A stretch of 64,000 bases of DNA from IMGVR_UViG_3300043418_000072:1-64000, one strand, 5' to 3'. Positions 7,245 to 58,545 are shown, numbered from the stretch's first letter. Numbers and translations: made by a program. Notes: generated by a model from the letters alone, not told the origin.

Positions 7245-7277
7245 GTTAGATTAGTTTTAGTGCCATGTGTTCTATAG

Positions 7278-39929: not shown

Positions 39930-39938
39930 GGATAATTA

Positions 39939-41519: not shown

Positions 41520-41575
41520 TCCTATTGTAAAAGCACCATAAAACTAAGATAAATAACTAATAATCAGGTAAAAGA

Positions 41576-43117: not shown

Positions 43118-43131
43118 TATCGGAATACAAA

Positions 43132-44192: not shown

Positions 44193-44507
44193 ATGAGTAA
44201 CATACCTACGATTGTGGACCAAATTCGATTAGCCACTAACTATCAAAAGAACAAGCGCATACTACGGGAGCGCATCCAAACTGATCTGCATTTTGCACAT
44301 AATGGCGGTTTATTTAAAATCACTCCGGGCCTGATCTCTTTTGTAAAAGAATGGCCTGTTGACGAACTGTACATTGAAGATGTGTACGAGAATCCAATTC
44401 AAGTGGATAGACAGGTATTCTTAGTGCAAGCACAACAACATTACAGTCGAGTTATGAATGAATGGCATCAACAACATGCAGAACTTAAAAAGATTAGAAA
44501 AATCTAA
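44193..44507 (+). CDS. Hypothetical protein (start 44193)
   Basis: ORF; the upstream TTG start lies inside the -35 box. Confidence 0.65.
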   Translation: MSNIPTIVDQIRLATNYQKNKRILRERIQTDLHFAHNGGLFKITPGLISFVKEWPVDELYIEDVYENPIQVDRQVFLVQAQQHYSRVMNEWHQQHAELKKIRKI

Positions 44508-45303
44508 GGGCGTGTTATTGTTTGCATTTAACAATGCAGATACTGATTACATTAAGCTAACCAGCAACACTATTCGCTTGATTAAGCATAACCTCGGCTT
44601 GCCAGTTACGTTAGTAACGGGCTTAGATGAAGTAGTTGATTTTGAAGTTGATAACATAGTACGCATTGAATCACAAGGTGGCAACACACGTTACAGCACA
44701 GAGCTAGGTCAACGTGTACAGTGGCGAAACTTTGGTCGGTATATGGCCTACGAGCTTAGTCCATACGATGAAACTATTCTTATGGACACTGACTACCTTG
44801 TATTAGATAACAGTCTATTGACATATTTTGATACAACGTGGGACTACTTAATTCCACATCGTAATATTAATTTGGGACAAGATGAATTTGCGGATACCAT
44901 GGGCATGTACAGCTTGCCATTTATCTGGGCCACAGTTATCTTGTTTCGCAAAACAACCAAAGCAGAAACGCTATTTGATTTAGTGGGACGAGTGCAGCGT
45001 AATTACGATTACTATAAGATGTTATACAATATCCCTGCAACTAATTATCGTAACGATTATGCGTTTGCGATTGCAGATTATTTGGTTAACGGTTACCAGA
45101 CTGATAAACAAACGCAGTTACCACAGCCTTTATTAACTGCCACTGGGCAGCTACAAAGTATTAATAGGATTGGATCTTTACTGCACGTCAAAGACACTAA
45201 CGAAGGCTATGTTATCCCATTGGGTAATTTACATGTCCTGAGTAAAGGATATTTACTTAGTAACAACTTTAAAACATTTGTGGATCAGCACTGTGCAGCA
45301 TAA
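44476..45303 (+). CDS. GT-A fold glycosyltransferase (GT8-like)
   Basis: GVLLFAFN...SPYDETILMDTDYLV with intact DxD; late H..K motif. Confidence 0.7.
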   Translation: MQNLKRLEKSKGVLLFAFNNADTDYIKLTSNTIRLIKHNLGLPVTLVTGLDEVVDFEVDNIVRIESQGGNTRYSTELGQRVQWRNFGRYMAYELSPYDETILMDTDYLVLDNSLLTYFDTTWDYLIPHRNINLGQDEFADTMGMYSLPFIWATVILFRKTTKAETLFDLVGRVQRNYDYYKMLYNIPATNYRNDYAFAIADYLVNGYQTDKQTQLPQPLLTATGQLQSINRIGSLLHVKDTNEGYVIPLGNLHVLSKGYLLSNNFKTFVDQHCAA

Positions 45304-46135
45304 AGAACAACAGGGATTTTTAACTATTGCACAAAACGGCAATGCAGATTATCTGCGAATGGCCTACGTGCAAGCATTGAGTATTAAGGCAGTGACACCG
45401 GGTGCCAGGTATGCAGTTATTGTAGACGCAGCTACTATGGCACAAGTGTCAGAGCAACATCGCAAGGTGTTTGATTATGTAATTGAATTAACACATGATT
45501 ATTCAACTGGTACTGATTGGAAGTTAGCAAATGAATGGCAAGTATTTTGGCTTACTCCTTTTAAGGAAACGATCAAGCTGGAAGCAGACATCGTGGTTAC
45601 ACGGGACATGACACAGAGGTGGGACCTATACCGTATGCGTGATGTGGTATTGGGACTAGGATGCAGAAACTATCATGGCGACCAAGTGCCAAGTCCATAT
45701 CGAACATTGTTCGTAGACAATGAGTTACCTGATGTATATAATGGACTGATGTATTTTCGTTATAGTAAAACAGCATTAGAATTCTTTAAGGTCGCAAGAG
45801 AGCTGTTCCTTACGTGGGAGCAGGTTGGGGCAGAGTTTAAGCGAACAGCAACTACTCAGGCCACTACAGATTTCGTATATGCAGTGGCCTCTAACATTGT
45901 TGGTAGAGAGTTAACTACGTTACCCGGGGTTGGAACAAGTTTTGTACACATGAAGCCCGGTATTAATGGATGGCCGTCGGATACTGAATTTCATAGGGCA
46001 GTTAATGTAGTAGTAGATGCACCAGATATTAGAATCAATAATGTGCTGCAACTATTTCCGGTCCATTATCATTACAAAGACTTTATCACAGATGAGATAA
46101 TTAGAGATTATGAACGAGCTGCCGGAGTTAATTAA
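45278..46135 (+). CDS. GT-A fold glycosyltransferase paralogue
   Basis: GFLTIAQN...TPFKETIKLEADIV (ExD), VYNGLMYF, FVHMK, HYH. Aligns by eye with 44476. Start may be GTG 45293. Confidence 0.7.
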   Translation: MWISTVQHKEQQGFLTIAQNGNADYLRMAYVQALSIKAVTPGARYAVIVDAATMAQVSEQHRKVFDYVIELTHDYSTGTDWKLANEWQVFWLTPFKETIKLEADIVVTRDMTQRWDLYRMRDVVLGLGCRNYHGDQVPSPYRTLFVDNELPDVYNGLMYFRYSKTALEFFKVARELFLTWEQVGAEFKRTATTQATTDFVYAVASNIVGRELTTLPGVGTSFVHMKPGINGWPSDTEFHRAVNVVVDAPDIRINNVLQLFPVHYHYKDFITDEIIRDYERAAGVN

Positions 46136-46460
46136 AGCATTTGGTTTGATTGAACCAGAGGTTGCGCAAACCATTGAATATCGTTTATACTACGATGTAC
46201 ATGGTAATGCCCTGTACATGGGTATGGGTGATAGTAAAGGTACTAATTATATCACTATACCAAAATCAGTTTATGATAGAGCAACAGTACATAACCTAAA
46301 AGTTGTAAATGAACAGTTAATCACAATCGATGCTGGTACAATGTGGTTGCAGTTACGTAAATCAACAAGTGGGTACGCAGTAGTTAAGAACCATCCTGCG
46401 CTGCTAATAGAACAAGACGAAGAGTATACAGACATCGAATACTATGACAGAAATAATTGA
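46110..46460 (+). CDS. Hypothetical protein
   Basis: ORF coupled within the operon; no motif recognised. Confidence 0.6.
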   Translation: MNELPELIKAFGLIEPEVAQTIEYRLYYDVHGNALYMGMGDSKGTNYITIPKSVYDRATVHNLKVVNEQLITIDAGTMWLQLRKSTSGYAVVKNHPALLIEQDEEYTDIEYYDRNN

Positions 46461-47343
46461 CGTTGCAGACCTGGACTGCATCTTCCTTACATATGATGAA
46501 CCTAAAAAAGAAGAATTCTGGATTCAGATACAGAATGTCGTTCCTTGGGCCAAGCGGGTGGATGGCGTTAGCGGGAGCGATGCTGCACACAAAGCAGCGG
46601 CAAGAGCTAGTGACACGGACCGCTTCATTCTTATTGACGGAGACAACCTCCCCGATCCTTCTTTCTTTAACCGGCAACTTAGTATTGATGATACTAATCG
46701 TGATTGTGTATTTAGATGGAGAGCAAGGAATATTATAAATGGATTACAATATGGCAATGGTGGGATTTCGTGCTGGACTAGGAGCTTTGTCGAATCTATG
46801 CGCACACACGAAGCCACTGACGGTAGTCATGAGACACAAGTTGAATTCTGTTTCCATCCTCAATACTGGGCTATGGCCGACTGCTACAGTACCACGCATC
46901 CGAATGCCACTGCGTTCCAGGCTTGGCGTGCAGGATTTAGGGAAGGCGTTAAAATGTGTTTGGACCGTGGACGTAAACCAAGTTTATCTGATTTCAAAAA
47001 TAGCGTTGTTAGGCGAAACCTTGACAACTTATCTATCTGGCACAACGTGGGATCAGATGTGGAAAATGGACTGTGGGCAATGGCAGGTGCCCGCCAAGGT
47101 ACTTACAACACCATGCTCTCAGACTGGGACTACACAGAAGTCCAAGACTTCCAAAAGTTAAAAGACTATTGGGATAACACGGTACACAAGTTTGATGTTA
47201 TTGACTTTGTAAACTTATACAGCGTTGAATTGACGAGATGCTTGGACTTACCTATTATTGACTTGGACGAATACCAAAGTAAATTTTTCAAACATCACTA
47301 CAATAGTCAGTTTAAGAATAAGGGAATCATGTGCAGAGAATAA
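46444..47343 (+). CDS. GT-A fold glycosyltransferase (GT2-like)
   Basis: CIFLTYDEP...AAHKAAARASDTDRFILIDGDN with DxD; GNGG; AWRAGFREGVK. Confidence 0.7.
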   Translation: MTEIIDVADLDCIFLTYDEPKKEEFWIQIQNVVPWAKRVDGVSGSDAAHKAAARASDTDRFILIDGDNLPDPSFFNRQLSIDDTNRDCVFRWRARNIINGLQYGNGGISCWTRSFVESMRTHEATDGSHETQVEFCFHPQYWAMADCYSTTHPNATAFQAWRAGFREGVKMCLDRGRKPSLSDFKNSVVRRNLDNLSIWHNVGSDVENGLWAMAGARQGTYNTMLSDWDYTEVQDFQKLKDYWDNTVHKFDVIDFVNLYSVELTRCLDLPIIDLDEYQSKFFKHHYNSQFKNKGIMCRE

Positions 47344-47897
47344 AAGGCATGATAGTCATTGGTACTGCTCGCAGTGGTAGTCACATGACCTGCGACATGC
47401 TTTATAACGAGTCGCAGTTGCCTGAAAAACTTATACTAGGTGAAGTCACTGAGCTGCCTGATATAGCTGACAAGTTTGTGTATTGCAGCATTGTGCAAAA
47501 CTGGGTAAAGATTGCGCTAGCAGTAGACATTAGTTGGACAAGTGATTACTATGTGGTTAATTTACGCCGTAGAGACAAAGTAGCACAGTATCTAAGTTGG
47601 TGCGTGTTTAGGGCGCAAACACAGGCTAGCATAAGCAAACATTCGCCGGACTGGAATGACTATAAAGACTTGTTACCGTGGGAGTCGACTAAGGACGACA
47701 TAGAGCAATTTCTAATGGAACAATATTTGGACTTTGCAATTACACCAAATGAGATTGTCTATTACGAAGATATGATCAAGTCCTGCAAGACAACTAAGTT
47801 TAAGCAGAACCAATACCCGATCCCTCCCCAAGAGATAGTAACCAATTACACATTAGTTAAAAACATGTTAGAGAAATTTTCATATGACAACAGGTAA
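47331..47897 (+). CDS. Sulfotransferase-like protein (Stf0-like); start may be ATG 47349
   Basis: IVIGTARSGSH PAPS-binding loop, LRRRDKVAQYLS 3'-phosphate motif and YED. Confidence 0.6.
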   Translation: MQRIKGMIVIGTARSGSHMTCDMLYNESQLPEKLILGEVTELPDIADKFVYCSIVQNWVKIALAVDISWTSDYYVVNLRRRDKVAQYLSWCVFRAQTQASISKHSPDWNDYKDLLPWESTKDDIEQFLMEQYLDFAITPNEIVYYEDMIKSCKTTKFKQNQYPIPPQEIVTNYTLVKNMLEKFSYDNR

Positions 47898-49275
47898 GAG
47901 CGACTTTATGAGTGCAGCTGATGAGATGAAGGCCAACTTGGGCCCTGCTCTCTGTTTGGCTAAATGGCAACAAGTAAGTCTGCACCTACCAACTGGATTA
48001 AACAACAGTTGCTACCATCCACCATTGCACAAGATCGACCCAGAAGCCATTAAACTTAACCCTGGCGCACTGCATAACACTGAGCACAAAAAGCAACAGC
48101 GTGTGATCATGCTAAAGGATGAAAAGCCTAGCGAGTGCAGCTATTGCTGGAACATTGAAGCACATGATCAACTAAGCGACAGACATTACAGAAGCGGAGA
48201 GCCCTGGGCAGCAGAACACTATGACGAGATCAAAAATTCTACAGGATCCGAAGATACGATTCCAAGTTATGTGGAAGTCAATTTTAATCACGCTTGTAAC
48301 CTTAAGTGTAGTTATTGCAGCCCTCAGTTTAGCAGTAGTTGGGCTGATGAAGTTGCTAGGCACGGAGCATTTCCTACTAGTGTTCCCCATAATGACCCTG
48401 CTCATTTTACGGGTGTTCGACGACCAATCCCTGCTCGTGAAGACAACCCTTATGTTGATGCGTTTTGGGAGTGGTGGCCTGAACTGTACCCTAAACTTAA
48501 ACATTTTAGAATGACAGGCGGCGAGCCACTAATGGACAAGAACACTTACAAGGTGTTTGACTATGTGCTGGCCATGCCCAAGCCTGACCTGCACTTAAAC
48601 GTAACCAGTAACTTCAGTGTAGAGCCCAAGCTAATGGATCAGTACCTTGACTACGTTAAGCGATTGTGCGATACACAAATTGAACACTTCATGCAGTATG
48701 TTAGTTTAGATAGCGGTAACATGGAACAGGCTGAGTACATTCGACATGGCATGACAGCATCTCGTGTTCATAATAATGTGCAGCGTTACCTAACTGATAT
48801 TCCTTATCGCAACAGTCTCACATTCATTATCACAATGAATAATTTAAGCATCGTTGGCTTACAGGCGCAGCTGGATTGGATTCTGGATTTACGAAAACAG
48901 CATAGCACAACTTATCAACGTGTTTGGTTCGACACTCCGTTGTTACGCACACCTAGCTGGCAAAGCATCCAGATCATGCCATGGGTCTATGTCAAGCGTA
49001 TGGAAGATGTACTAAAATGGATGCAAGCAAATGCCGAAACAGCAGACAAACCATTTCAGGGTTTTAAGGACTACGAGATACAACGTATGGCTCGTGACAT
49101 AGAATGGATGAAGGAAGGTAGCACTCTTGACCCTGAATATGTTACACTGCAACGTGCTGACTTTTATCGCTTCTTTAATCACCACGATACGAGACGCGGC
49201 ACTGACTTTAAAACAACATTCCCGGAAATGAAAGAGTTCTGGGACGAATGTAGGTACCATGCCCAGAATCAATAA
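47884..49275 (+). CDS. Radical SAM protein (N-terminal twitch, subfamily A)
   Basis: CNLKCSYC, TGGEP, VTSN. N-terminal CLAKW...SCYH...CSYC. Confidence 0.88.
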   Translation: MTTGKSDFMSAADEMKANLGPALCLAKWQQVSLHLPTGLNNSCYHPPLHKIDPEAIKLNPGALHNTEHKKQQRVIMLKDEKPSECSYCWNIEAHDQLSDRHYRSGEPWAAEHYDEIKNSTGSEDTIPSYVEVNFNHACNLKCSYCSPQFSSSWADEVARHGAFPTSVPHNDPAHFTGVRRPIPAREDNPYVDAFWEWWPELYPKLKHFRMTGGEPLMDKNTYKVFDYVLAMPKPDLHLNVTSNFSVEPKLMDQYLDYVKRLCDTQIEHFMQYVSLDSGNMEQAEYIRHGMTASRVHNNVQRYLTDIPYRNSLTFIITMNNLSIVGLQAQLDWILDLRKQHSTTYQRVWFDTPLLRTPSWQSIQIMPWVYVKRMEDVLKWMQANAETADKPFQGFKDYEIQRMARDIEWMKEGSTLDPEYVTLQRADFYRFFNHHDTRRGTDFKTTFPEMKEFWDECRYHAQNQ

Positions 49276-50608
49276 CGAAACAGACCTAGAATACAAACGC
49301 AGAGTAATCGACATTAAGAGCGAAAGCTTCTGCGGAGCAAAATGGTACAACGCCACTATCTGGTTAGGTAGTGGTCAAACCACTAGTTGCCATCATCCGT
49401 TGCCACATGCAATCGATGTAAGCGAGCTATCATCTAACCCCAAAGCATTGCACAACACTACCAAGAAGAAAATGGAACGTGAGCAGATGCAAAAGGGAGA
49501 ACGTCCTGCAGGTTGTGAATACTGCTGGAAGATTGAAGATATGGGCAAAGACGCAGTAAGCGACCGTGTTTACAAAACAGTTATATATGACGATAAGGAT
49601 TTGAATTATGCTTTTAGTACCCCAGCCAGCACCGATGTGGATTTGCAAACTTTGGAAATTGCTTTCGACCGCACTTGTCAGTTTGCATGTAGCTACTGCA
49701 ATCCTGCTTTTAGCAGCACTTGGGTTAAAGACATTAGGAATAACGGGGCCTATAACGGATTGGTTAGTGACGGACGAAATCACTTTACTCATGCTCATGA
49801 TAGCTCTCAACTGTATCGCTTCGGTCAAGCTAATCCTTATGTGGACGCCTTTCACAAGTGGTGGGAAAGCGATCTCCACAGAACACTAAAGGAACTACGC
49901 ATTACTGGCGGCGAGCCGTTAATGTCAGGTGAGACTTGGAAGCTAATTGACTGGTTTAAGACTAATAACGGCAAGAGCAAGACACGTCTGGCTATTAACA
50001 GTAACTTAGGCACAGAGGTAGATATTGATCGTTTGCTCGATGCCATTGATGGAGTAGAAGTTGACTTGTACACTAGCAACGAATCTATTGGCTTGCAGTC
50101 TGAGTACATCCGTGATGGTATTAACTTTGGGGACTGGACTAACAACGTAGAGCGTTTACTGGCTAGTGGCAAGTTCCGTGGCCTGCATGTGATGTGTACT
50201 ATTAACGCACTATGTCTTACTAGCTTAGACAGCTTCCTTGAAATGTTGTTAGCATGGAAGAGTAGGTATGGTAAGGACTCGATTAACTTTTCGCTAAATA
50301 TTTTACGATTCCCAAGTTTTCAAAGCCCGTTGGTATTACCCGACGAACTACGCACCCAATACAGAACAAATCTCAGCAACTTCTATCAAGCTCACAAAGA
50401 CACTGGCGTGTGCCACGGATTTGAAATTGATCAATTGAAACGACTAATTGATTACCTTGATGTAATGATAACTCCACATGCAGGTGCGGCAGAGCAATCA
50501 GTGCTACAACAGGACTTTAAAAACTTCTTTGCACAGTACGATCAACGCAGGGGCAAAGACTTCTGCAACACATTCCCTGAGCTAGCAGCTTGGTATAATC
50601 AACTATAA
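49259..50608 (+). CDS. Radical SAM protein (N-terminal twitch, subfamily A)
   Basis: CQFACSYC, TGGEP, INSN. N-terminal FCGAKW...SCHH...CEYC. Confidence 0.88.
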   Translation: MPRINNETDLEYKRRVIDIKSESFCGAKWYNATIWLGSGQTTSCHHPLPHAIDVSELSSNPKALHNTTKKKMEREQMQKGERPAGCEYCWKIEDMGKDAVSDRVYKTVIYDDKDLNYAFSTPASTDVDLQTLEIAFDRTCQFACSYCNPAFSSTWVKDIRNNGAYNGLVSDGRNHFTHAHDSSQLYRFGQANPYVDAFHKWWESDLHRTLKELRITGGEPLMSGETWKLIDWFKTNNGKSKTRLAINSNLGTEVDIDRLLDAIDGVEVDLYTSNESIGLQSEYIRDGINFGDWTNNVERLLASGKFRGLHVMCTINALCLTSLDSFLEMLLAWKSRYGKDSINFSLNILRFPSFQSPLVLPDELRTQYRTNLSNFYQAHKDTGVCHGFEIDQLKRLIDYLDVMITPHAGAAEQSVLQQDFKNFFAQYDQRRGKDFCNTFPELAAWYNQL

Positions 50609-50640
50609 TTCACTATAATTCACTATAATTCACTATAATG
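50592..50640 (+). repeat. 10-bp tandem repeat (ACTATAATTC) spanning a stop-start junction
   Basis: Three exact units at 50602-50631, a partial unit ending in the ATG, and one degenerate upstream unit. Five TATAAT hexamers at a 10-bp period. Confidence 0.95.
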
Positions 50641-51954
50641 GCAGATAACCTAAACGACTACTACAAAGATTACAACTACGGCGCACGTAAGCCGGTGTAC
50701 ATCAAAGAAGAAGACCTACGCACGGATCAGCTCGATCGACTAATTAAGAGCGATCAGTTCTGCATGATTCCCTGGATCCACATGCACGCCTTTCCTGACG
50801 GTCGTGCATATCCTTGCTGCCTGAGCGAGCCAGACCATCCAATTGGTAATCTTAAAACGCAAACCATGCGTGAGATTTGGAACGATGCTCCGCTAAAGGA
50901 CATGCGTAAACGTATGCTACTAAATCAACCTTGCAAGGAATGTACCAAGTGCTATGAGCAAGAAGATAGCAAACTGTTTAGTATGCGTGAAAGTGCTAAC
51001 AAGAACTTCGGGCACCACATTGGATTAGTTGACGACACAAAAGAGGATGGACAATATGATGACTTTAAATTGCGCTACTATGATATTCGCTTTAGCAACC
51101 TTTGTAACTTTAGCTGCCGTACCTGCGGTAGCATCTTTTCAAGTAGTTGGTATAGAGATGAAAAAGCAGCTGGATGGGATCCAAAACACCCTCAAGTGAT
51201 GTATGCTGGTAAAGACAAAGGCGACATGTGGGAGCAGATGCAAGAGCATATCCCACATTTGGAACAAATCTACTGGGCAGGTGGCGAACCGCTTATTATG
51301 GAAGAACACTGGAAGGTACTTGACGAACTAGTTAAGCGCAAGATGTTCCACGTGCGACTGATCTATAACACTAACTTTAGCGAAATGAAGTTTAAAGGTC
51401 GTGACGTATTCGAAATGTGGAAACTGTTTGATTGTGTTAGCGTTGGTGCTAGCTTAGATGGCAGCTATGAGCGCGGCGAGTACATCCGCAAAGGACAAGA
51501 TTGGCAGCAAACCGTTGACAACCGCAAGCGCATGATTGAAGTATGCCCTAACGTAGACTTTTACGTTAGTAGTACAGTAAGCATGATGAACGTGTTGCAT
51601 ATTGCAGACTTTCACCGAGAGTGGAGCGACCTTGGTCTAGTACGCCCAATGGATTGGAACATCAACATCCTACAACATCCGCATCGTTATCGTGTTGATG
51701 TGTTGCCTCAGCATTTGAAAGAGCAAGCCAAAGCAAAGATTGAAGAACACTTACAGTGGCTACGCCCGCAAGACAAACTAAGCAGAGCCACTAGCGGTTA
51801 CGAAGGTATTATTAACTTCATGATGGCAAACGATAGCACAAGCCAATTGCCCGAGTTCTTTAAGAACAATGACTTGATTGATAATGTACGCAAGGAAAAC
51901 TTCTTTGCCGTATTCCCGGAACTTGGAGACCTAAAGAACTATGCACCTACCTAA
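50638..51954 (+). CDS. Radical SAM protein (N-terminal twitch, subfamily B)
   Basis: CNFSCRTC, AGGEP, YNTN, ASLDG. N-terminal FCMIPW...PCC...CTKC. Confidence 0.9.
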   Translation: MADNLNDYYKDYNYGARKPVYIKEEDLRTDQLDRLIKSDQFCMIPWIHMHAFPDGRAYPCCLSEPDHPIGNLKTQTMREIWNDAPLKDMRKRMLLNQPCKECTKCYEQEDSKLFSMRESANKNFGHHIGLVDDTKEDGQYDDFKLRYYDIRFSNLCNFSCRTCGSIFSSSWYRDEKAAGWDPKHPQVMYAGKDKGDMWEQMQEHIPHLEQIYWAGGEPLIMEEHWKVLDELVKRKMFHVRLIYNTNFSEMKFKGRDVFEMWKLFDCVSVGASLDGSYERGEYIRKGQDWQQTVDNRKRMIEVCPNVDFYVSSTVSMMNVLHIADFHREWSDLGLVRPMDWNINILQHPHRYRVDVLPQHLKEQAKAKIEEHLQWLRPQDKLSRATSGYEGIINFMMANDSTSQLPEFFKNNDLIDNVRKENFFAVFPELGDLKNYAPT

Positions 51955-53149
51955 GACTATTTGTATGCTGCCGTGGGTTAGTATTGAGACTAGCCCAATG
52001 GGAACCACACGCCCATGTTGTCTCGCACAAGAGCAGATCACAGACGAAAACGGGGTCAAGTACGATCTTAATGAAACAGACTTAGCAACAGTGTACAAGA
52101 GCGAATACATGCAGAATCTGCGTAGACAATTCCGTGCAGGTGAAAAGCCTGCAACATGTAGTGACTGCTGGAAAGAAGAAGAAATTGGTCGCAACAGCAA
52201 ACGTATCAACAGCCAGATTCGACTAAAGGAATTGTACCCGCTCGTGGACTGGGCCAACGACACGCCAGACCAGCTGTGGTTCATTGACTTAAAGTTAGGC
52301 AACATCTGTAACTTAAAATGCCGTATCTGCGGAAGCTGGAGCAGCAGCAAGTGGGCAGAGGAAGAAATGAATTACATGCCTGCAGGCGCAGACAAGAAAC
52401 AACATATCGCATACCAGTGGTTAAAGAAAGGCGCATGGCCACGCAAGACCACAACGTTCTGGGACAACCTCAGAGAGATGCTACCTAACATCAAATACTT
52501 TGAGTTCACTGGCGGAGAACCATGGTTGATTCAAGAGCACTTTGATCTATTGCGTTATGCAGCCGACAACGGCTTTGCAAAGGGTATTGATATTCACTAC
52601 AATACAAATGCTACCCAATGGCCCGAAAATGCAGTAGATCTATGGAAAGAGTTTGGTCGTGTGGATATTGCATTTAGCGTTGATAACGTAGGTGATCGGT
52701 TTGAATATGAACGCTACGGCGCTAAGTGGGATCGAGCAAACGAAGTAATTGATGCAGCACATCAACTGCGCCGAGTGCAGAAGAATATTACAACTCAGCT
52801 ATGTTTTACAATCAACATTCAAAACGTTTATTACATCGATGAATTGCTAGCTTGGGCTGCACCTAAGATGTTTAACAGCATCCACTTCAACATGTTACAT
52901 AGCCCTAACCATATGAGCGTACAATACATGACACCCGCAGCACAAGAGCTGGTTGTTGCTAAACTGCAATCAGTAACATGGCCGGGTCGTTATCAGCAAG
53001 AAGTTGACAACGTAGTTAGGTTTATACAAAATGGGCAGGGCAGTGATGGTGCAGAATTCCTGCGCCAAATGCAGCGCACAGACGAATACCGCAAGCAAGA
53101 CTTTAGAACAACTCACTTAGACATCGCAAAGGCAATGGGGTATGAATAA
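51941..53149 (+). CDS. Radical SAM protein (N-terminal twitch, subfamily B)
   Basis: CNLKCRIC, TGGEP, YNTN, FSVD. N-terminal ICMLPW...PCC...CSDC. Confidence 0.9.
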   Translation: MHLPKTICMLPWVSIETSPMGTTRPCCLAQEQITDENGVKYDLNETDLATVYKSEYMQNLRRQFRAGEKPATCSDCWKEEEIGRNSKRINSQIRLKELYPLVDWANDTPDQLWFIDLKLGNICNLKCRICGSWSSSKWAEEEMNYMPAGADKKQHIAYQWLKKGAWPRKTTTFWDNLREMLPNIKYFEFTGGEPWLIQEHFDLLRYAADNGFAKGIDIHYNTNATQWPENAVDLWKEFGRVDIAFSVDNVGDRFEYERYGAKWDRANEVIDAAHQLRRVQKNITTQLCFTINIQNVYYIDELLAWAAPKMFNSIHFNMLHSPNHMSVQYMTPAAQELVVAKLQSVTWPGRYQQEVDNVVRFIQNGQGSDGAEFLRQMQRTDEYRKQDFRTTHLDIAKAMGYE

Positions 53150-54446
53150 ACCTGCCACTATGTGCCTTGCACCTTGGGTACATACATATCTAAGTCCACA
53201 AACAGAACGCAGAATGTGTTGCGCTAGCCGCGAACCTGCACAAAATTTTCAACAGTATATCGACGTTTCAGCGGGTACAGGACGTTATATACCAATAACT
53301 CTAGAAGAACACTGGAATAGCGAGCACATGCGGTCGGTCCGTCGTCGCATGATTGCTGGGGAAACCCTACCAGAGTGTGAAGTATGTAATGATAAACTGT
53401 TGAATACTTCCGTTTACCGCAGCTATTTTGACCATATGTTCGGGCATAAGTATGATTACAATGTTGTAATAAACGCAACGGACGAGACGGGCTACACTAC
53501 AATGAAACCCGTTAGCTGGGATTACAGGTTTACCAATCTGTGTAATTTCAAATGCCGTATGTGTGGTGACATGTTAAGTAGTAGTTGGGAGACAGAGCAA
53601 AGACAGCATAACATGATAGATTGGTCTAATCCAAAGAATACTTGGATGCAACCTGAAGTCAAAAAACAAATTGAGCAATTTCAAGATAGAGAAATTGAGG
53701 CAGAGTTTAGTCAAGCCGTCGAAGAACACCGTGTTGAAGAAGTCTACTGGGTTGGCGGAGAACCGCTCATGTATGAACAACACTGGCGCTATATGCAACG
53801 CATCATAGAACTAGGAGATGGCCAAAATGTCTATGCACGATATAATACAAATCTTTCTCGAACTACTTATCGTGGTGTTAACTTGTACACTGATATCCTT
53901 GCTAATATACGGGATTGGCAAATATGTGCAAGTCTTGACGGTACGGGACCAATTGGCGAATACATTAGAACAGGCCTTGATTACCCTAGATGGCTTGAAA
54001 ACTTCCGTGCAGGAATTGCGATCCAGCGTCACCGTCGACAAATGCGAATCGACTTTACCCTTACCTTGCCGGGTATGTTCGAGCTCGAATCCATGCAAAG
54101 ACTGTCCCAAGAACTCAACGTTGACCTCCTTGCCAAAGTAATTTTTAGTTTCAGCCCGGACATAGTTATGTCACCTTTAGCCCTACCTAGACATCTACTA
54201 GATGAATGGATAGATGAACAACTTAACTTAATCAGTAACGATCCGTTAAAGGATATCTTAGTCCAGCTGAAAACTAGACCCACTTTTGCTGAACAATGGC
54301 CCAATGAATATCAAGATGGACTAAAGCGTGGCAAAGCTCGTATCAAAAAACTTGAACAAATTCGCAATGACCAGTATACTATGAGAGATATACTTGCAGA
54401 CAGACCTGCGGTATTAGAATGGTGGGACTCAATTGGGATATCGTGA
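53142..54446 (+). CDS. Radical SAM protein (N-terminal twitch, subfamily B)
   Basis: CNFKCRMC, VGGEP, YNTN, ASLDG. N-terminal MCLAPW...MCC...CEVC. Confidence 0.9.
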   Translation: MNKPATMCLAPWVHTYLSPQTERRMCCASREPAQNFQQYIDVSAGTGRYIPITLEEHWNSEHMRSVRRRMIAGETLPECEVCNDKLLNTSVYRSYFDHMFGHKYDYNVVINATDETGYTTMKPVSWDYRFTNLCNFKCRMCGDMLSSSWETEQRQHNMIDWSNPKNTWMQPEVKKQIEQFQDREIEAEFSQAVEEHRVEEVYWVGGEPLMYEQHWRYMQRIIELGDGQNVYARYNTNLSRTTYRGVNLYTDILANIRDWQICASLDGTGPIGEYIRTGLDYPRWLENFRAGIAIQRHRRQMRIDFTLTLPGMFELESMQRLSQELNVDLLAKVIFSFSPDIVMSPLALPRHLLDEWIDEQLNLISNDPLKDILVQLKTRPTFAEQWPNEYQDGLKRGKARIKKLEQIRNDQYTMRDILADRPAVLEWWDSIGIS

Positions 54447-54642
54447 ACGCTTAGACAGACTATATCACTCTCATGCAAAAACTCTCCAAGGGTTCGAGAG
54501 AGTAACCGAATTGCTCCAACAGGAATATCCGGGCAACTATCGAGTGCATGAGGCATTTGTCCCGTCTAAGATGAGTTGGGGACCACGATTGGTATTTGAG
54601 GACGAACAAGAAGAAATTGTGTTTCGATTAAAGTATGAATAA
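54433..54642 (+). CDS. Small hypothetical protein
   Basis: 69 aa ORF overlapping both neighbours. Confidence 0.6.
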   Translation: MGYRERLDRLYHSHAKTLQGFERVTELLQQEYPGNYRVHEAFVPSKMSWGPRLVFEDEQEEIVFRLKYE

Positions 54643-55723
54643 AGTAACAGTAACCCTGCAAAACCCCTTAGACAAAAGCGACACGTTAGATTACTACATC
54701 AACGTAAACGATACTCCAATGGGCAAACTGTGGTTCGAAGCATTGCAGGATGTAGTGCAGCGTAATCTATATCTTGAAAAGAACTTTTGCTTTTTGGGAT
54801 TTCCTGACAGCCAACGTGACTTGCGTTTTATTTGCCAAGAACTGTTTTGGGCAGTAAATGAGATTAACAGTTTCTTTGACGACTATCATATCGAAGAATT
54901 GTATACTCATACCACATTACGTGATCCAGTTACACTCGATCCCAACCAAGACTTGATGAACAAGTTGCATAATCATTTTGAGATACTGCAAGGCACTGTT
55001 AACGGACTTAGTGAATATTACAAGCGGGCAGACTACACTACAAAGTTTGCTATCCGCCAACTAAACTTACTATGCCACGAAGCAGAAAGTTTAATGTTAA
55101 GCCAGCGTAAAAAAGCAACAGCGCCAGAGTGGGTACGCCCTAGCCAAATCACAACCTTTTTAAATTGTCCACGATATGAATTCCCAGGAATATGTAAAAC
55201 TGCTTTTAGCGAACATAACTACGATCGACGCTTTGGGGAAGTCTACTTACATTGGACACAGATTGGCAAAACACTGTTTGAAGTTTATAGAGATGAGGCG
55301 GGAGTCGATATTGACCAGGCCACTTGTGATGCTATTACTCACCTACGTTACTATAGCGGGGAGTTTGACATTGAATGGGCGCAAGATGTATGCTTTAATG
55401 GTCCGCATCCTTGGCACACCCGAGAGCTTACAGGATTTAGGGATTGGCTTGTCCGTAACGGATTCGACTTACATGACACGCAATATAACTATGGATACCA
55501 TTCAGTGGGCCAAGTTTCGTTGCAAGAAAGTTTTGGCACAACTGATTACGCCAACATATGGCCCATCCTCTCTAAATACCTTGACATACAGGGGATCACT
55601 ACAGATGACGGGCGAGGGAATGTACTACGCTCCCTATATCCCTACACTTGGACAGACCAAGACTACTACCAACAACAAATCAACCGTTTAAAGCCTGGAT
55701 ATGATTATAGCAGCAGGCGATAG
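54635..55723 (+). CDS. Hypothetical protein with His/Glu motifs
   Basis: 362 aa ORF containing LHNHFE and NLLCHEAE; family not recognised. Confidence 0.65.
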   Translation: MNKVTVTLQNPLDKSDTLDYYINVNDTPMGKLWFEALQDVVQRNLYLEKNFCFLGFPDSQRDLRFICQELFWAVNEINSFFDDYHIEELYTHTTLRDPVTLDPNQDLMNKLHNHFEILQGTVNGLSEYYKRADYTTKFAIRQLNLLCHEAESLMLSQRKKATAPEWVRPSQITTFLNCPRYEFPGICKTAFSEHNYDRRFGEVYLHWTQIGKTLFEVYRDEAGVDIDQATCDAITHLRYYSGEFDIEWAQDVCFNGPHPWHTRELTGFRDWLVRNGFDLHDTQYNYGYHSVGQVSLQESFGTTDYANIWPILSKYLDIQGITTDDGRGNVLRSLYPYTWTDQDYYQQQINRLKPGYDYSSRR

Positions 55724-56525
55724 TTTTGTTTATGGCAGTGAGCTAGCAAGCCCTGCCAATACCTTTACAGCATTGTTAGGCGCAGACGAGTGCGTTGCAT
55801 GGCCAGGATATAGCAACGATGCTATTGCCCGCACCACCATTGAACGTTGCGAGCAAGGCGGGGTAACTGGTGTAATCGTTAGCTGGACATTTCCCGGTCG
55901 TTACGAGTTTAGATTTGCATACGATACAAAGCAACGCAAAAGTCCATGGTACAGCATTAACTCGTGGACGATAAAACAAGATGCAAGAGAAATTGAAAAA
56001 GAATTCGTTACTAAGGATAAGGCTATTCTGGATGCCCAGCTGGAGACCATCGGCAGAGCGCAGACGACTGGTGTTGCAGATTTTGCAAGAACGTTCTACG
56101 CACACGTGGGTTCTACGGAATATTGGGAAGTGTATTCAAGTCTTAAAGAAATTGTGTACCTTCAAAATTACCTTCAAGTAAAAGGCATTCCCTACATGTT
56201 TACTTGTGCAGACAATAGCTTGATCTATAACTACACCGTTAGCCAAAACGATCCTACTATTATGAGTCTTGTAAACCAAATTGATTTGTTGAAATGGTAT
56301 TGGTTTCCTGCAGGAACTAAGTTTAATGAAACATGCGACCCAAGAGGTTTCTATCAGTGGGCAAAGGAAAATAAATACCCTATAGGCACCACACATCCGC
56401 TAGAGCAAGCGCACAGTGACGCAGCCCTATTAATGAAAGAACAATTCAATGAACTGGTTAAAAAGTCTGTACAACAGAATCCGTCTAGAGATTCGTTACC
56501 GCAAGAAACTCAAGGAATTGCGTAA
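55701..56525 (+). CDS. SGNH/GDSL-like hydrolase or acyltransferase
   Basis: AAGDSFVYG, AWPGYSNDAI and C-terminal THPLEQAH. Confidence 0.65.
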   Translation: MIIAAGDSFVYGSELASPANTFTALLGADECVAWPGYSNDAIARTTIERCEQGGVTGVIVSWTFPGRYEFRFAYDTKQRKSPWYSINSWTIKQDAREIEKEFVTKDKAILDAQLETIGRAQTTGVADFARTFYAHVGSTEYWEVYSSLKEIVYLQNYLQVKGIPYMFTCADNSLIYNYTVSQNDPTIMSLVNQIDLLKWYWFPAGTKFNETCDPRGFYQWAKENKYPIGTTHPLEQAHSDAALLMKEQFNELVKKSVQQNPSRDSLPQETQGIA

Positions 56526-56546
56526 GCGCGATCCATTTATATACAA

Positions 56547-57092
56547 ATGATGTTTGTTAACGGTGACAGCTTTACATACGGGGAAGAACTACCACACGAC
56601 CAAAAACCGTGGCCACAGTTATTAGACTGCCCTGTTATGAATAGAGCTCAGCCGGGCTATAGCAATGATGCAATCGTTAAGTCTACGGTGGTTGCAGTAG
56701 AGAATAATTACCCAACCTATGCAATCATTGCTTGGACTACACCTAATAGGATAGAAGTAAACGGACAACACCTTACTCCAAGTAGTCATAGAAAGTATGG
56801 ATCGATTTGCGATCATGTATTCTTGGATTGGGACGAAGAATGGGCCATAACAAAGTTTTTAACGCAAGTGGTAATGTTAGATGCGTACTTGCGTGATCGC
56901 AATGTACCTTATGTATTTGTAAGAACGTTCGATGTTCCTAATTGCAAGGTAGGCAATTGGATACCGGGCAGTATGGTAGAATGGATGGGCGATTGCCCTA
57001 AAGGACCCGGCGGGCATCCGCTAGAGCTAGGTCATCAAAGAATAGCAGATAAAATAAATGAACATATTAGGCATCTCGGCTGGTTATCATGA
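56547..57092 (+). CDS. SGNH/GDSL-like hydrolase or acyltransferase paralogue
   Basis: VNGDSFTYG, NRAQPGYSNDAI and GHPLELGH. Confidence 0.65.
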   Translation: MMFVNGDSFTYGEELPHDQKPWPQLLDCPVMNRAQPGYSNDAIVKSTVVAVENNYPTYAIIAWTTPNRIEVNGQHLTPSSHRKYGSICDHVFLDWDEEWAITKFLTQVVMLDAYLRDRNVPYVFVRTFDVPNCKVGNWIPGSMVEWMGDCPKGPGGHPLELGHQRIADKINEHIRHLGWLS

Positions 57093-58545
57093 CGCAGCCG
57101 CAACAGTGTTAGACGAAGATGGGAACATCCTTTTCGCCAGTCATTCCGAAAGATATAGTAAGTCAAAGTCGGATGCTAATTTCTGTAGTCCACTTATTCG
57201 TAAGCTCGAGGAATACAATCCCATTCAGACCGTGGCTTATTACGAACGTCCTATATATAAGCAGCTACGTCAGGCTTATGCAGGACAAGGATTTGAGTGG
57301 GATAAGCTCAGCGTTAAGAAACTTGTGCATAAGCAGATTGGTCATGCCAAGTGGTGGGATCTTGCCCACTACAAAAACTACAACCATCACCTTAGCCATG
57401 CAGCAGCGGGATTTCAAACAAGCGATTTTAACAGAGCAACCGTGGTCGTTATTGATGCCATTGGGGAGTTTGAAACAACCACTATATGGGGAGCTGAATA
57501 CATTAACGGTAAGGCAACGTATAAAAAACTTTGGCAACAGAATTACCCACATTCAATCGGACTCTTTTATAGTGGAGTTACTCAGCGGGTTGGCCTACGC
57601 CCACTAGACGAAGAATACATTCTAATGGGCATGGCTGCTTATGGTAATCCGGTGCAAACTAGCAATAGTATGCGTTATGACTTAATCGATGATGAATGGG
57701 AGATTAAGTTTAAAGAAAACATGCACATAGGACTTTCGCAAAAGTATCTATGTGATTTTAAAGACTATGATCTAGCGGCCGGCGCTCAAGACTTAGCAGA
57801 GGATTTAATTCTCAATGTTATGGTTCGAGCAAAGCAATTTAAGTGGAGTGACAATCTTGTATACATGGGCGGGTGCGCTTTAAACTGTGCAGCAAATGCA
57901 CGTATAGGAAACTACTTTGAGAATATATGGATTATGCCTAACCCTGGCGATGCTGGCAGTAGCCTTGGTGCTGCTGCTTTGGCTTATGGGGGTGCCCTTA
58001 ACTGGAGAGACGCTTATCTCGGGCATGATATTCCTGGGCCTTACCCTGTTAACAACATTTTGGACGAGTTACTTACTCGGCAAATTGTGGGAGTGGCTTC
58101 CGGGCGAGCCGAATTCGGACCAAGGGCACTTGGAAACAGAAGCCTGCTTGCAGATCCTAGAGGCAGCGAGATTAAGGAGAAAGTAAATGACATTAAACGT
58201 AGACAACAATTCAGACCATTTGCGCCCGTTATTTTGGAAGAACTGGCTGATACTTACTTTGATATGCCTCGCGGTTTCGAGCATAGTAGGTATATGCAGT
58301 CAGTCGCTCGTTGCAGGGTACCTGACTTATTTCCTGCTATCGTTCACGCTGACGGGACTAGTCGTGTCCAGACAGTGCCGAAAGATGGAAGCGGCATTAG
58401 AGAGCTGCTCGAGAAGTGGTATGTAATGACCGGATGCCCTATGCTGTTAAACACAAGCCTTAACATTCGTGGGGAACCAATGGTAAACGATCGTGCAGAC
58501 GCCGACCGCTTTGAACAATTATACAGCGTAAAGGTCTGTTCATGA
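57058..58545 (+). CDS. O-carbamoyltransferase (NodU/CmcH/TobZ family)
   Basis: ILGISAGYHDAAA, HHLSHAAAG, IDAIGE, GGCALNC, GDAGSSLGAA, EFGPRALGNRS, FRPFAP, HADGTSRVQTV, LLNTSLN. Confidence 0.93.
   Translation: MNILGISAGYHDAAATVLDEDGNILFASHSERYSKSKSDANFCSPLIRKLEEYNPIQTVAYYERPIYKQLRQAYAGQGFEWDKLSVKKLVHKQIGHAKWWDLAHYKNYNHHLSHAAAGFQTSDFNRATVVVIDAIGEFETTTIWGAEYINGKATYKKLWQQNYPHSIGLFYSGVTQRVGLRPLDEEYILMGMAAYGNPVQTSNSMRYDLIDDEWEIKFKENMHIGLSQKYLCDFKDYDLAAGAQDLAEDLILNVMVRAKQFKWSDNLVYMGGCALNCAANARIGNYFENIWIMPNPGDAGSSLGAAALAYGGALNWRDAYLGHDIPGPYPVNNILDELLTRQIVGVASGRAEFGPRALGNRSLLADPRGSEIKEKVNDIKRRQQFRPFAPVILEELADTYFDMPRGFEHSRYMQSVARCRVPDLFPAIVHADGTSRVQTVPKDGSGIRELLEKWYVMTGCPMLLNTSLNIRGEPMVNDRADADRFEQLYSVKVCS

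What the first reader, a model, noticed from the sequence alone, without database searches (positions are those of the whole stretch)
47884..54446. Five tandem radical SAM paralogues with an N-terminal auxiliary Cys module, in two subfamilies
Seen: all five have CxxxCxxC and GGEP. Each carries an N-terminal C-x2-3-W...C(C/x)...CxxC module rather than the usual C-terminal SPASM. 47884 and 49259 share C.AKW...SC.HP; 50638, 51941 and 53142 share C..PW...CC, as does 7278. Known: SPASM/twitch enzymes act on peptides, proteins and sugars (e.g. BtrN dehydrogenase, anaerobic sulfatase maturases). Inference: a permuted-twitch family expanded by duplication, performing sequential radical steps on one substrate, plausibly the sugar made by neighbouring genes. 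Seven Fe-S enzymes in 64 kb is a heavy investment for a phage.
Basis: partly seen in the sequence, partly recalled or inferred. Interest (0 to 1): 0.72.

Follow-up and report, generated by a model that had tools for sequence, protein, structure and literature searches.

The report
Phage radical-SAM array in glycan island
A freshwater jumbo phage carries five old, non-redundant copies of an uncharacterised radical SAM enzyme family (extra iron-sulfur 'twitch' module at the front of the protein instead of the back) inside a conserved sugar-modification gene island next to its tail-fibre genes, which points to unknown radical chemistry on a glycan.

Summary
Five tightly packed ORFs (47884-54446, + strand) each carry CX3CX2C, GGEP and a conserved N-terminal four-Cys module. 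All five match NCBIfam NF033640 (N_Twi_rSAM, 'twitch domain-containing radical SAM protein') at 284-412 bits against a cut-off of 170. So the 'permuted twitch' architecture is already catalogued. I found no characterised member, solved structure or paper.

The window is the start of a 354-kb T4-like jumbo phage from freshwater. The genome holds eight family members. The five are ancient paralogues (21-32% identity). In 65 related uncultured phage contigs, R1, R2, R3 and R5 are always present in the same order, R4 is present in 52, and arrays hold 4-9 genes.

The array lies in a roughly 21-kb island directly after the tail-fibre genes. The island holds GT8-like and nucleotide-sugar-fold proteins, SGNH-like proteins, a carbamoyltransferase, an APS-kinase-like protein, a DegT aminotransferase and an SDR.

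Elsewhere the family is interleaved or fused with glycosyltransferases: Vibrio phage K566, metagenomic contigs, and one rSAM-GT2 fusion.

Best reading: successive BtrN-like radical tailoring steps on a sugar or glycan. The chemistry and the glycan's target are inferred, not shown.

The parts
47884..49275 (+). R1: N-terminal-twitch radical SAM (463 aa). Twitch Cys C24, C43, C85, C88; SAM-cluster Cys C138, C142, C145; GGEP.
   Evidence: NF033640 301 bits. Orthologue in 65/65 related loci, median 69% identity. Cys conservation 100%.
49259..50608 (+). R2: N-terminal-twitch radical SAM (449 aa), sister group of R1 (32% identity).
   Evidence: NF033640 293 bits; 65/65 loci; tree.
50638..51954 (+). 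R3: N-terminal-twitch radical SAM (438 aa). Twitch module is residues about 42-105 (DNA 50761-50952): C42-x12-G55-x4-C60/C61 ... C102-x2-C105.
   Evidence: NF033640 412 bits; Pfam SPASM at residues 42-105. AF2 pLDDT 93. 65/65 loci.
51941..53149 (+). R4: N-terminal-twitch radical SAM (402 aa). This is the variable slot of the array.
   Evidence: NF033640 334 bits. Orthologue in 52/65 loci, otherwise absent or replaced by a divergent paralogue. The long start is needed to keep invariant C8.
53142..54446 (+). R5: N-terminal-twitch radical SAM (434 aa). Most conserved of the five; lacks the hairpin Gly.
   Evidence: NF033640 284 bits; 65/65 loci, median 74% identity.
44458..46135 (+). GTa (44458-45303) and GTb (45278-46135): two homologous GT8/glycogenin-like proteins.
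   Evidence: hhalign A3 vs A4 probability 97.9%. GTb profile vs glycogenin-1 E 0.004. Weak assignment.
46444..47343 (+). GTc: nucleotide-diphospho-sugar transferase / nucleotidyltransferase-fold protein with an invariant DGDN motif. It lies upstream of R1 and is the most conserved non-rSAM gene of the island.
   Evidence: AF2 pLDDT 78. Foldseek best hit PBCV-1 A64R, E 8e-3. All 50 top VIA hits are GT-A or nucleotidyltransferases, Z 6-8.3. Sub-threshold GT2 match. Adjacency of GTc to the first rSAM also seen in L085 and L087.
47331..47897 (+). Accessory 188-aa ORF of unknown function with a P-loop-like GTARSGS motif. A sulfotransferase role is only a motif-level guess.
   Evidence: No Pfam or NCBIfam family. 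Present in only 3 of 80 related loci.
54635..55723 (+). u54635: conserved 362-aa protein of unknown function directly after R5.
   Evidence: In nearly all related loci. No hit in Pfam, PHROGs, PDB profile or Atlas.
55701..57092 (+). Two SGNH/GDSL-like proteins (55701-56525, 56547-57092).
   Evidence: Invariant GDS...G.N...H blocks; weak DUF6071 hits. Inference only.
57058..58545 (+). NodU/CmcH-type O-carbamoyltransferase.
   Evidence: Pfam Carbam_trans_N and Carbam_trans_C, E 4e-35 and 5e-47. A 46%-identical homologue sits two genes from an N_Twi rSAM in Ralstonia phage RsoM2USA.
58742..59164 (+). APS-kinase-like P-loop kinase.
   Evidence: Pfam APS_kinase E 8e-8; NCBIfam hits all below cut-offs.
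59161..60279 (-). u59161: possible GT10-like glycosyltransferase (lead only). Paralogues are inserted between rSAM genes in related arrays.
   Evidence: Atlas features: 99 of 100 named neighbours carry Glyco_transf_10, score 0.80. No Pfam or PDB support. 44 insertions in 65 arrays.
63558..64000 (-). DegT/DnrJ/EryC1 sugar aminotransferase. It runs on to genome position 64667 and is followed by an SDR epimerase/dehydratase at 64649-65617.
   Evidence: PF01041 264 bits, open frame intact; PF01370 144 bits.
38463..44127 (+). Tail-fibre-like or virion structural genes directly upstream, on the same strand.
   Evidence: Weak PHROG tail-fibre and virion-protein hits. Synteny with the island is conserved.
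7278..8510 (-). R6: sixth N_Twi family member in the window, next to a C-terminal-SPASM rSAM (8500-9450).
   Evidence: NF033640 237 bits; Pfam.

Best explanation
Shown: R1-R5 are five functional, ancient, non-redundant members of the N-terminal-twitch radical SAM family (NCBIfam NF033640). Each has the SAM-cleaving [4Fe-4S] site (CX3CX2C, GGE) and an N-terminal CX12-17C...CX2C module.

Inferred: the N-terminal module binds one auxiliary [4Fe-4S] cluster ligated by four cysteines, as in BtrN. Such fully ligated clusters are proposed to take an electron from the substrate radical. The default chemistry is therefore H-atom abstraction followed by oxidation (alcohol to ketone), or a related rearrangement such as epimerisation, dehydration or decarboxylation.

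Inferred from context: the substrates are sugars, either nucleotide-activated or already part of an oligosaccharide. The five enzymes would carry out different, successive tailoring steps. They would work together with the GT8-like and nucleotide-sugar-fold proteins upstream, and with the SGNH-like, carbamoyltransferase, kinase, aminotransferase and SDR enzymes downstream. The product would be an unusual decorated glycan.

Least certain: because the island is co-oriented with the tail-fibre genes and always follows them, I favour the virion (fibres) as the destination of the glycan. The host envelope is the alternative.
For: Family and architecture.

Non-redundancy: 21-32% pairwise identity. 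Each of R1-R5 forms an orthologue clade with 99-100 support. R1, R2, R3 and R5 are in 65/65 arrays in fixed order. The rSAMs (median 63-74% identity) are more conserved than GTa/GTb (46-49%) and the fibre protein.

Sugar context in this genome: carbamoyltransferase and APS-kinase-like protein, DegT plus SDR, GT8-like and GT-A-fold proteins.

Family-wide link with glycosyltransferases, from independent sources:
- Vibrio phage K566: four N_Twi rSAMs alternate with two GT8 genes and a GT4-like gene.
- L085: six or more N_Twi rSAMs interleaved with five GT2 genes, one as an rSAM-GT2 fusion protein.
- L086: next to NDP-sugar epimerase/C-methyltransferase, RmlD and GT2 genes.
- L088: among GT2 x3, GT4, GDSL and B12-rSAM genes.
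- RsoM2USA: rSAM near the same carbamoyltransferase.

Precedent: BtrN is a twitch rSAM dehydrogenase with a four-Cys auxiliary cluster (PMC9012708). The best structural core matches include the sugar-acting BlsE and DesII.

Identical contigs occur in a freshwater metatranscriptome. This is suggestive only.
Against: No biochemical data exist for any family member.

The glycosyltransferase assignments in this window are individually weak (E 0.004-0.008, sub-threshold Pfam).

Structural neighbours of the core include peptide-modifying enzymes (CteB, anSME, SuiB, SkfB) as often as sugar-modifying ones.

Some family members are fused to TPR, Sel1 or a subtilase-like domain, which hints at protein substrates.

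The contexts I inspected were chosen partly by their fusions and are few; three randomly chosen members lay on contigs too short to inform.

Cluster binding by the N-terminal Cys is inferred from sequence only. The ligand co-fold was not run by the tool, and I could not read the model coordinates.
Confidence: 0.55

Rival explanations
1. The five enzymes are protein or peptide maturases. They would install cross-links, epimerise residues or oxidise side chains on a phage protein, for example the Gly/Ser/Thr/Asn-rich fibre-like proteins encoded just upstream, in the manner of sactipeptide/ranthipeptide maturases or anSME.
For: Most characterised SPASM/twitch enzymes act on peptides (PMC9012708). 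Top Foldseek and VIA matches include CteB, SkfB, SuiB and anSME. Family members are fused to TPR, Sel1 and a Peptidase_S8-like domain. The array always follows the fibre genes.
Against: No RiPP-recognition or PqqD-like domain was detected. No conserved small precursor ORF is present: the 69-aa ORF 54433-54642 is found in only 1 of 80 loci. All scores to named peptide-maturase families are far below cut-off. Family members repeatedly interleave or fuse with glycosyltransferases. The fibre-like protein evolves much faster than the enzymes.
Confidence: 0.2
2. The island hypermodifies phage DNA or nucleotides. It would build a glycan or other adduct on a base, with the rSAMs acting on nucleotides as viperin, MoaA or QueE do, to evade host restriction.
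For: Phage glycosyltransferases that decorate DNA are known (cited in PMC12619734). Weak hits to viperin and MoaA models. ThyA and DHFR lie next to the island. The genome has a QueE-like rSAM elsewhere.
Against: There is only one thymidylate-synthase-family gene. It scores as a canonical ThyA and sits beside DHFR, so no hydroxymethylase candidate is evident. No Tet/JBP match was found, but the control for that search was uninformative. Viperin and MoaA scores are 15-30 bits against cut-offs of 180-284. The island is joined to the structural genes, not the replication genes.
Confidence: 0.1
3. The same enzymes remodel the host cell envelope (LPS, capsule or S-layer glycan) during infection, for superinfection exclusion or to prevent progeny re-adsorbing, rather than decorating the virion. 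This shares the chemistry of the best explanation and differs only in the target.
For: GT8 enzymes typically act on the LPS core (established knowledge). Cellular homologues lie in polysaccharide-type clusters. Carbamoyl, sulfate and amino-sugar tailoring are typical of surface glycans.
Against: No flippase, polymerase or lipid-carrier transferase was seen in the island. The island is co-oriented with the late structural genes and invariably linked to them.
Confidence: 0.15

Closest known systems
NCBIfam NF033640 (N_Twi_rSAM, twitch domain-containing radical SAM protein)
   Same: All five ORFs, plus three more in the genome, match full length and well above the curated cut-off, with the same N-terminal twitch followed by the rSAM core.
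   Different: The family is only a bioinformatic definition. I found no characterised member, structure or paper. Arrays of 4-9 tandem members in a phage have not been described.
BtrN (butirosin 2-deoxy-scyllo-inosamine dehydrogenase), the archetypal twitch rSAM
   Same: One auxiliary cluster site of four Cys with a beta-hairpin plus helix. The BtrN twitch aligns to the N-terminal module (E 4e-4). It acts on a sugar-like substrate. In the butirosin pathway the ketone product goes to an aminotransferase (PMC9012708 ref. 29); its DegT family membership is from my own knowledge. A DegT gene is present in the island here.
   Different: In BtrN the twitch is C-terminal; here it is N-terminal. Overall sequence similarity is marginal, and the chemistry here is untested.
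SPASM-domain peptide maturases and anSME (CteB, SkfB, SuiB, AlbA, anSMEcpe)
   Same: Same rSAM core subgroup, with the best Foldseek and VIA matches (Z 12-13). The CX9-15GX4C...CX2C motif is shared.
   Different: Those enzymes have a C-terminal seven-Cys SPASM with two auxiliary clusters, often an N-terminal RRE, and an adjacent precursor peptide. None of these is present here.
Sugar-acting radical SAM enzymes BlsE and DesII; viperin
   Same: BlsE is the top VIA match (Z 13.0) and DesII is in the top ten. These enzymes act on nucleoside-linked or nucleotide-linked sugars.
   Different: Only the core barrel aligns (TM <= 0.37 over the query). There are no N-terminal twitch counterparts, and family-model scores are far below cut-offs.
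rSAM/GT8 cluster of KVP40-like Vibrio phages (e.g. K566) and the rSAM of Ralstonia phage RsoM2USA
   Same: Phage-encoded N_Twi rSAMs alternate with glycosyltransferases or sit near the same carbamoyltransferase. These phages are cultured, so they can be tested.
   Different: Only about 23% identical to R3, with fewer copies and a different genomic position. The genes are annotated only as 'radical SAM' or 'MoaA/NifB/PqqE family'.
Virus-encoded virion glycosylation (mycobacteriophage capsid/tail glycans; chlorovirus A64R)
   Same: Virus-encoded glycosyltransferases sit next to structural genes. The best Foldseek hit for GTc is PBCV-1 A64R. Virion glycosylation in phages is documented (cited in PMC12619734).
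   Different: Those systems contain no radical SAM enzymes. Virion glycosylation is not shown here.

Membership tests
Radical SAM superfamily | CX3CX2C motif for the SAM-binding [4Fe-4S] cluster | tested here: met
   Invariant C138/C142/C145 (R1 numbering) in all paralogues and in 392/392 related ORFs.
Radical SAM superfamily | GGE SAM-binding motif and partial TIM-barrel core | tested here: met
   GGEP is invariant. The AF2 model (pLDDT 93) aligns to rSAM cores at Z 11-13.
NCBIfam NF033640 N_Twi_rSAM | Whole-protein HMM score at or above the curated cut-off (170 bits) with near full-length coverage | tested here: met
   284-412 bits, covering profile positions about 1-398 for all five. Confirmed on six-frame DNA.
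NCBIfam NF033640 N_Twi_rSAM | Twitch-type Cys module located N-terminal to the radical SAM core | tested here: met
   C-x12-17-C ... CX2C lies 45-55 residues before CX3CX2C. Pfam SPASM at R3 residues 42-105 and R4 residues 8-77.
SPASM/twitch rSAM subgroup (as characterised) | Auxiliary-cluster domain is a C-terminal extension | tested here: not met
   The module is N-terminal and there are no conserved C-terminal Cys. The review describes SPASM/twitch as C-terminal extensions (PMC9012708).
SPASM/twitch rSAM subgroup (as characterised) | Twitch rather than SPASM: a single auxiliary site, lacking the full seven-Cys CX2CX5CX3C motif | tested here: met
   Only four conserved N-terminal Cys positions (five in R3-R5 counting the CC pair).
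SPASM/twitch rSAM subgroup (as characterised) | The module actually binds an Fe-S cluster | not testable with these tools
Needs Fe/S analysis, EPR or Mossbauer.
BtrN-like rSAM dehydrogenase | Two-electron oxidation of a sugar or cyclitol hydroxyl, with a four-Cys auxiliary cluster as electron acceptor | not testable with these tools
   Four-Cys ligation is consistent and the twitch aligns weakly (E 4e-4). No activity data.
RiPP radical SAM maturases | RiPP recognition element (PqqD-like) and an adjacent conserved precursor peptide gene | tested here: not met
   No such domain in Pfam or NCBIfam scans. ORF 54433-54642 is not conserved. Detection of divergent RREs is limited.
Anaerobic sulfatase maturase (TIGR03942) / viperin (NF038283) / MoaA (TIGR02666) | Score over the family's curated cut-off | tested here: not met
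   Viperin 15-26 bits against 180 and MoaA 24-31 against 284. The sulfatase maturase model appears only for R6, at 31 against 349.

The most novel reading that the evidence does not exclude
A whole clade of freshwater jumbo phages, and separately KVP40-like vibriophages, encode a multi-enzyme radical 'assembly line' of 4-9 N-terminal-twitch rSAMs working hand in hand with glycosyltransferases. It would build a chemically unprecedented glycan (keto, deoxy, epimerised, C-C or C-O cross-linked sugars, further carbamoylated or sulfated) that is attached to the phage's own tail fibres and shapes adsorption or evasion of host defences. That would give the first function to a protein family of more than 9,000 sequence clusters and a new kind of phage virion modification.
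Probability: 0.25. Interest if true: 0.82.

Novelty: new member of a known kind. Interest (0 to 1): 0.6.

Why it matters
NF033640 is a very large radical SAM family: 9,285 clusters at 50% identity with E<=1e-30. It has a permuted domain order, and I found no known reaction, structure or literature for it.

This locus and its 65+ syntenic relatives give the clearest functional lead available. There is a fixed core of four distinct enzymes plus variable slots, always embedded among sugar-handling genes.

The same rSAM/glycosyltransferase interleaving recurs in cultured Vibrio phages, so the question is directly testable.

If the product decorates the virion, it would add radical chemistry to the small set of known phage glycosylation systems. 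It would also bear on host recognition by abundant freshwater jumbo phages.

It also raises the question of how oxygen-labile enzymes are used by phages of surface waters.

Tried and rejected
- Complex prediction with R3 + 2x[4Fe-4S] + SAM was accepted but not folded, so it gives no evidence either way.
- The search for related loci in genome contigs failed with alignment A2 (no conserved stretch). I therefore have no census of bacterial genomes.
- Profile-vs-PDB searches gave nothing for GTa, u54635, u59161 and SGNH1, and nothing meaningful for GTc.
- The Atlas search for u54635 was uninformative.
- Pfam on 14 u59161 homologues gave nothing, so its GT10 likeness rests on a language-model lead only.
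- Three randomly chosen family representatives lay on contigs of 1.6-5.6 kb with no useful context.
- The T4 late-promoter motif TATAAATA is not enriched. The sigma-70 and terminator scans were near background, so they give no timing evidence.
- The Tet/JBP search had no positive control.
- Megablast of the region against GenBank phages gave no match.
- Literature searches for the family name, for an N-terminal SPASM/twitch domain, and for jumbo-phage rSAM/GT clusters found nothing relevant.
- I considered and rejected recent redundant duplication or pseudogenes. All frames are open, the motifs are intact, and each paralogue has its own conserved orthologues.

Full report
**What is there**

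The window is the first 64 kb of a 354,098-bp IMG/VR virus record rated complete. The record is a T4-like jumbo myovirus. It has a gp20-type portal (about 50% identical to those of PA5oct and Atu_ph07), a T4-type baseplate hub and wedge, gp46/47-like genes and a 3,992-aa virion protein.

The DNA comes from freshwater metagenomes, with weaker matches in wastewater. No GenBank phage shares the region at the nucleotide level.

They form one tightly packed co-directional block. Successive genes overlap by 14, 17, 14 and 8 nt or are separated by 29 nt.

**The observation**

Every ORF has CX3CX2C and GGEP. Each also has four conserved N-terminal cysteines in the pattern C-x12-13-G-x4-C ... C-x2-C, about 50 residues ahead of the SAM-cluster motif. 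R5 lacks the glycine.

- Across 73 diverse sequences the three SAM-cluster Cys and three of the N-terminal Cys are invariant. The fourth is above 90% only because of alignment ambiguity at the 'CC' pair.
- Within each orthologue group the N-terminal Cys are 98-100% conserved.
- No conserved C-terminal Cys cluster exists.

The exception is ORF 7278, which has C..PW but not CC.

**Family assignment**

All five match NCBIfam NF033640 (N_Twi_rSAM, 'twitch domain-containing radical SAM protein') over its full length. Scores are 284-412 bits against a cut-off of 170. Pfam places its SPASM model at the N-terminus of R3 and R4.

A profile of the family aligns the C-terminal twitch of BtrN to profile positions 10-83 (E 4e-4).

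An AlphaFold2 model of R3 is confident (pLDDT 93, pTM 0.90). It shows a beta-hairpin plus helices in the N-terminal module, followed by the partial barrel and a C-terminal helical bundle.

- No solved structure shares the architecture. The best Foldseek TM by query is 0.37 and covers the core only. VIA-align gives Z 13 for BlsE, CteB, anSME, SuiB, DesII and SkfB.
- No Swiss-Prot model shares it either.
- AlphaFold DB clusters hold many uncharacterised look-alikes at TM 0.7-0.84, one of them named 'Twitch domain-containing radical SAM protein'.
- The review literature describes SPASM/twitch domains as C-terminal extensions (PMC9012708).
- Searches for the family name or for an N-terminal SPASM/twitch domain found no paper.

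It is already catalogued as a family and is functionally blank.

**Size and habits of the family**

An exhaustive profile search found 9,285 clusters (50% identity) at E<=1e-30 and 19,100 at E<=1e-10. Many of the best-scoring proteins are fusions of two or three complete modules. Other fusions join the module to GT2, TPR, Sel1 or a subtilase-like domain.

**The paralogues are old and each is kept**

Pairwise identity is 32% for R1/R2 and 21-29% otherwise.

A quick maximum-likelihood tree (SH-aLRT only; the careful search did not finish) splits the family members in these phages into two groups with 99% support. R1, R2 and accessory groups fall on one side. R3, R4, R5 and the three dispersed copies fall on the other. 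Each of R1-R5 forms a 99-100% supported orthologue clade on a long stem.

In 80 related IMG/VR contigs (R3 identity 51-97%) the whole neighbourhood is syntenic. Of these, 65 span the array:

- R1, R2, R3 and R5 are present in all 65.
- R4 is present in 52.
- The gene order never changes.
- Arrays hold 4-9 rSAM genes, with extra divergent paralogues inserted at the R1|R2 and R3|R5 junctions.

The rSAMs (median identity 63-74%) are better conserved than the neighbouring GT8-like genes (46-49%). This pattern argues for distinct, selected functions. It is what one expects of enzymes acting on fixed small-molecule intermediates. That last point is inference.

**Surroundings**

The array sits in an island of about 21 kb (44.4-65.6 kb), immediately downstream of the fibre-like and virion structural genes and co-oriented with them.

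Upstream of the array:
- Two homologous GT8/glycogenin-like proteins.
- GTc, a highly conserved protein. The first 147 residues of its model match only nucleotide-diphospho-sugar transferases and sugar nucleotidyltransferases: 50 of the 50 top VIA hits at Z 6-8.3. The best Foldseek hit is the chlorovirus capsid glycosyltransferase A64R, and there is a sub-threshold GT2 match.

Downstream of the array:
- A conserved unknown protein (u54635).
- Two SGNH-like proteins.
- A NodU/CmcH-type carbamoyltransferase (E 5e-47).
- An APS-kinase-like protein.
- A possible GT10-like protein (lead only).
- An 815-aa protein with a GTc-like domain.
- Just past the window end, an intact DegT aminotransferase and an SDR epimerase/dehydratase.

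Individually the glycosyltransferase calls are weak. Collectively the island is clearly about sugars.

**Family-wide association with glycosyltransferases**

- In cultured Vibrio phage K566, four N_Twi-type rSAMs alternate with two Pfam-significant GT8 genes and a GT4-like gene.
- Metagenomic contig L085 has at least six full N_Twi rSAMs interleaved with five GT2 genes. One of these is a single rSAM-GT2 polypeptide, and a GTc homologue sits directly before the first rSAM.
- L087 repeats the order GTa-GTb-GTc-rSAM.
- Cellular-looking contigs place TPR- or Sel1-fused members among NDP-sugar epimerase, C-methyltransferase, RmlD, GT2, GT4, GDSL and B12-rSAM genes.
- Ralstonia phage RsoM2USA has one strong member two genes from a carbamoyltransferase 46% identical to the one here.

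This sample is small and partly chosen by fusion partner. Three random picks were uninformative.

**Mechanism proposed**

Shown: the SAM-cluster site, the conserved four-Cys N-terminal module, and a confident rSAM fold.

Established for relatives: in BtrN the twitch cluster is ligated by four Cys and is proposed to accept the electron in a two-electron oxidation. In MoaA the cluster has three Cys ligands and binds the substrate (PMC9012708).

Inferred here: each enzyme abstracts a hydrogen atom from a sugar carbon. It then resolves the radical with help from the fully ligated auxiliary cluster. The outcome could be oxidation to a ketone, which would also feed the DegT aminotransferase, or epimerisation, dehydration or decarboxylation.

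Group-specific conserved extra cysteines (R1 C262, R4 C288, R5 C262) could act as hydrogen-atom donors, as in rSAM epimerases. That is speculation.

Whether the substrates are free nucleotide sugars or a growing glycan, and whether the glycan ends up on the fibres or the host envelope, is open.

**Rivals**

- Peptide or protein maturation keeps some weight. It is supported by the structural neighbours, the TPR/Sel1/S8 fusions and the position after the fibre genes. It lacks an RRE and a conserved precursor.
- DNA or nucleotide modification is less likely. There is a single canonical ThyA next to DHFR, no hydroxymethylase candidate, and far sub-threshold viperin and MoaA scores. The Tet/JBP search had no valid control.
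- Redundant duplicates or decaying genes are excluded by the orthologue conservation.

**Expression**

A freshwater metatranscriptome run holds contigs identical to most of 47884-53800. RNA libraries can carry DNA, so this is only suggestive.

**Verdict**

The genes are new members of a catalogued but uncharacterised family. The real interest is the conserved multi-rSAM/glycosyltransferase organisation and the existence of cultured phages in which it can be tested.

Noticed in passing
window 51941-51998 and 53142-53214: The public (JGI) gene calls start R4 at 51998 and R5 at 53214. That removes the invariant first Cys and Trp of the twitch module. The longer starts overlap the upstream stop codon by 14 and 8 nt and restore the family motif.
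   Followed up: yes
window 6816-9450 (- strand): A different radical SAM with a C-terminal SPASM domain (8500-9450) sits back-to-back with the sixth N_Twi copy (7278-8510). A SegE-type GIY-YIG homing endonuclease (6816-7244) flanks them on one side and the gp46/47-like (SbcCD) genes lie on the other. Its homologues also appear inside the rSAM array in some related phages and in L085.
   Followed up: partly
G000:C1:83908-86767 (outside the window): A QueE-like radical SAM (CNLVCSFCDT motif) lies about 1.5 kb from an ORF with a QueD-like C-x3-HG motif. This suggests a 7-deazaguanine pathway in the same phage. It rests on motifs only.
   Followed up: no
window 63558-64000, continuing to G000:C1:66994: The DegT aminotransferase is intact (369 aa, runs past the window end). 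It is followed by an SDR epimerase/dehydratase, then ThyA and DHFR. Two further SDR genes lie at about 93 kb (with DegT-like fragments beside it) and about 278 kb, so the genome has several sugar loci.
   Followed up: partly
P0121-P0146; L089:1311-5807: Many metagenomic proteins are fusions of two or three complete N_Twi rSAM modules (790-1,466 aa). This implies that neighbouring paralogues work as physical partners.
   Followed up: partly
L081 (Vibrio phage K566, 161548-169287 of the record): This cultured KVP40-like phage has four N_Twi-type rSAMs alternating with two GT8 genes and a GT4-like gene. All are annotated only as 'radical SAM' or 'hypothetical'. It is a ready experimental model.
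   Followed up: yes
L082 (Ralstonia phage RsoM2USA, 7941-12702 of the locus): This 344-kb cultured jumbo phage has one strong N_Twi rSAM, annotated as hypothetical. Two genes away is a carbamoyltransferase 46% identical to window 57058-58545.
   Followed up: partly
window 54433-54642: A 69-aa ORF bridges R5 and the next gene, overlapping both. It is called as a gene by JGI but has a homologue in only 1 of 80 related loci, so it is probably not a conserved precursor peptide.
   Followed up: yes
window 60278-62725: Residues about 590-775 of this 815-aa unknown protein are homologous to GTc (26-27% identity via L085/L087). They also give a weak PHROG 'nucleotidyltransferase' hit. GTc-like domains therefore occur twice in the island.
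   Followed up: partly
window 2119-2664 and 6816-7244: Two homing-endonuclease-like genes are inserted among the structural and recombination genes: an unnamed PHROG family with a homing-endonuclease hit next to the portal gene, and a SegE GIY-YIG gene.
   Followed up: no
window 25798-37776: A single 3,992-aa ORF matches a PHROG 'virion structural protein' family (1,166 bits). Window GC content peaks at 0.51 just downstream, in the 40-42 kb bin (fibre-like genes).
   Followed up: no
window 47884-53800: A freshwater metatranscriptome library (run X3) contains contigs identical to most of the array. A second RNA run holds near-identical fragments with a few substitutions, from a related strain.
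   Followed up: partly
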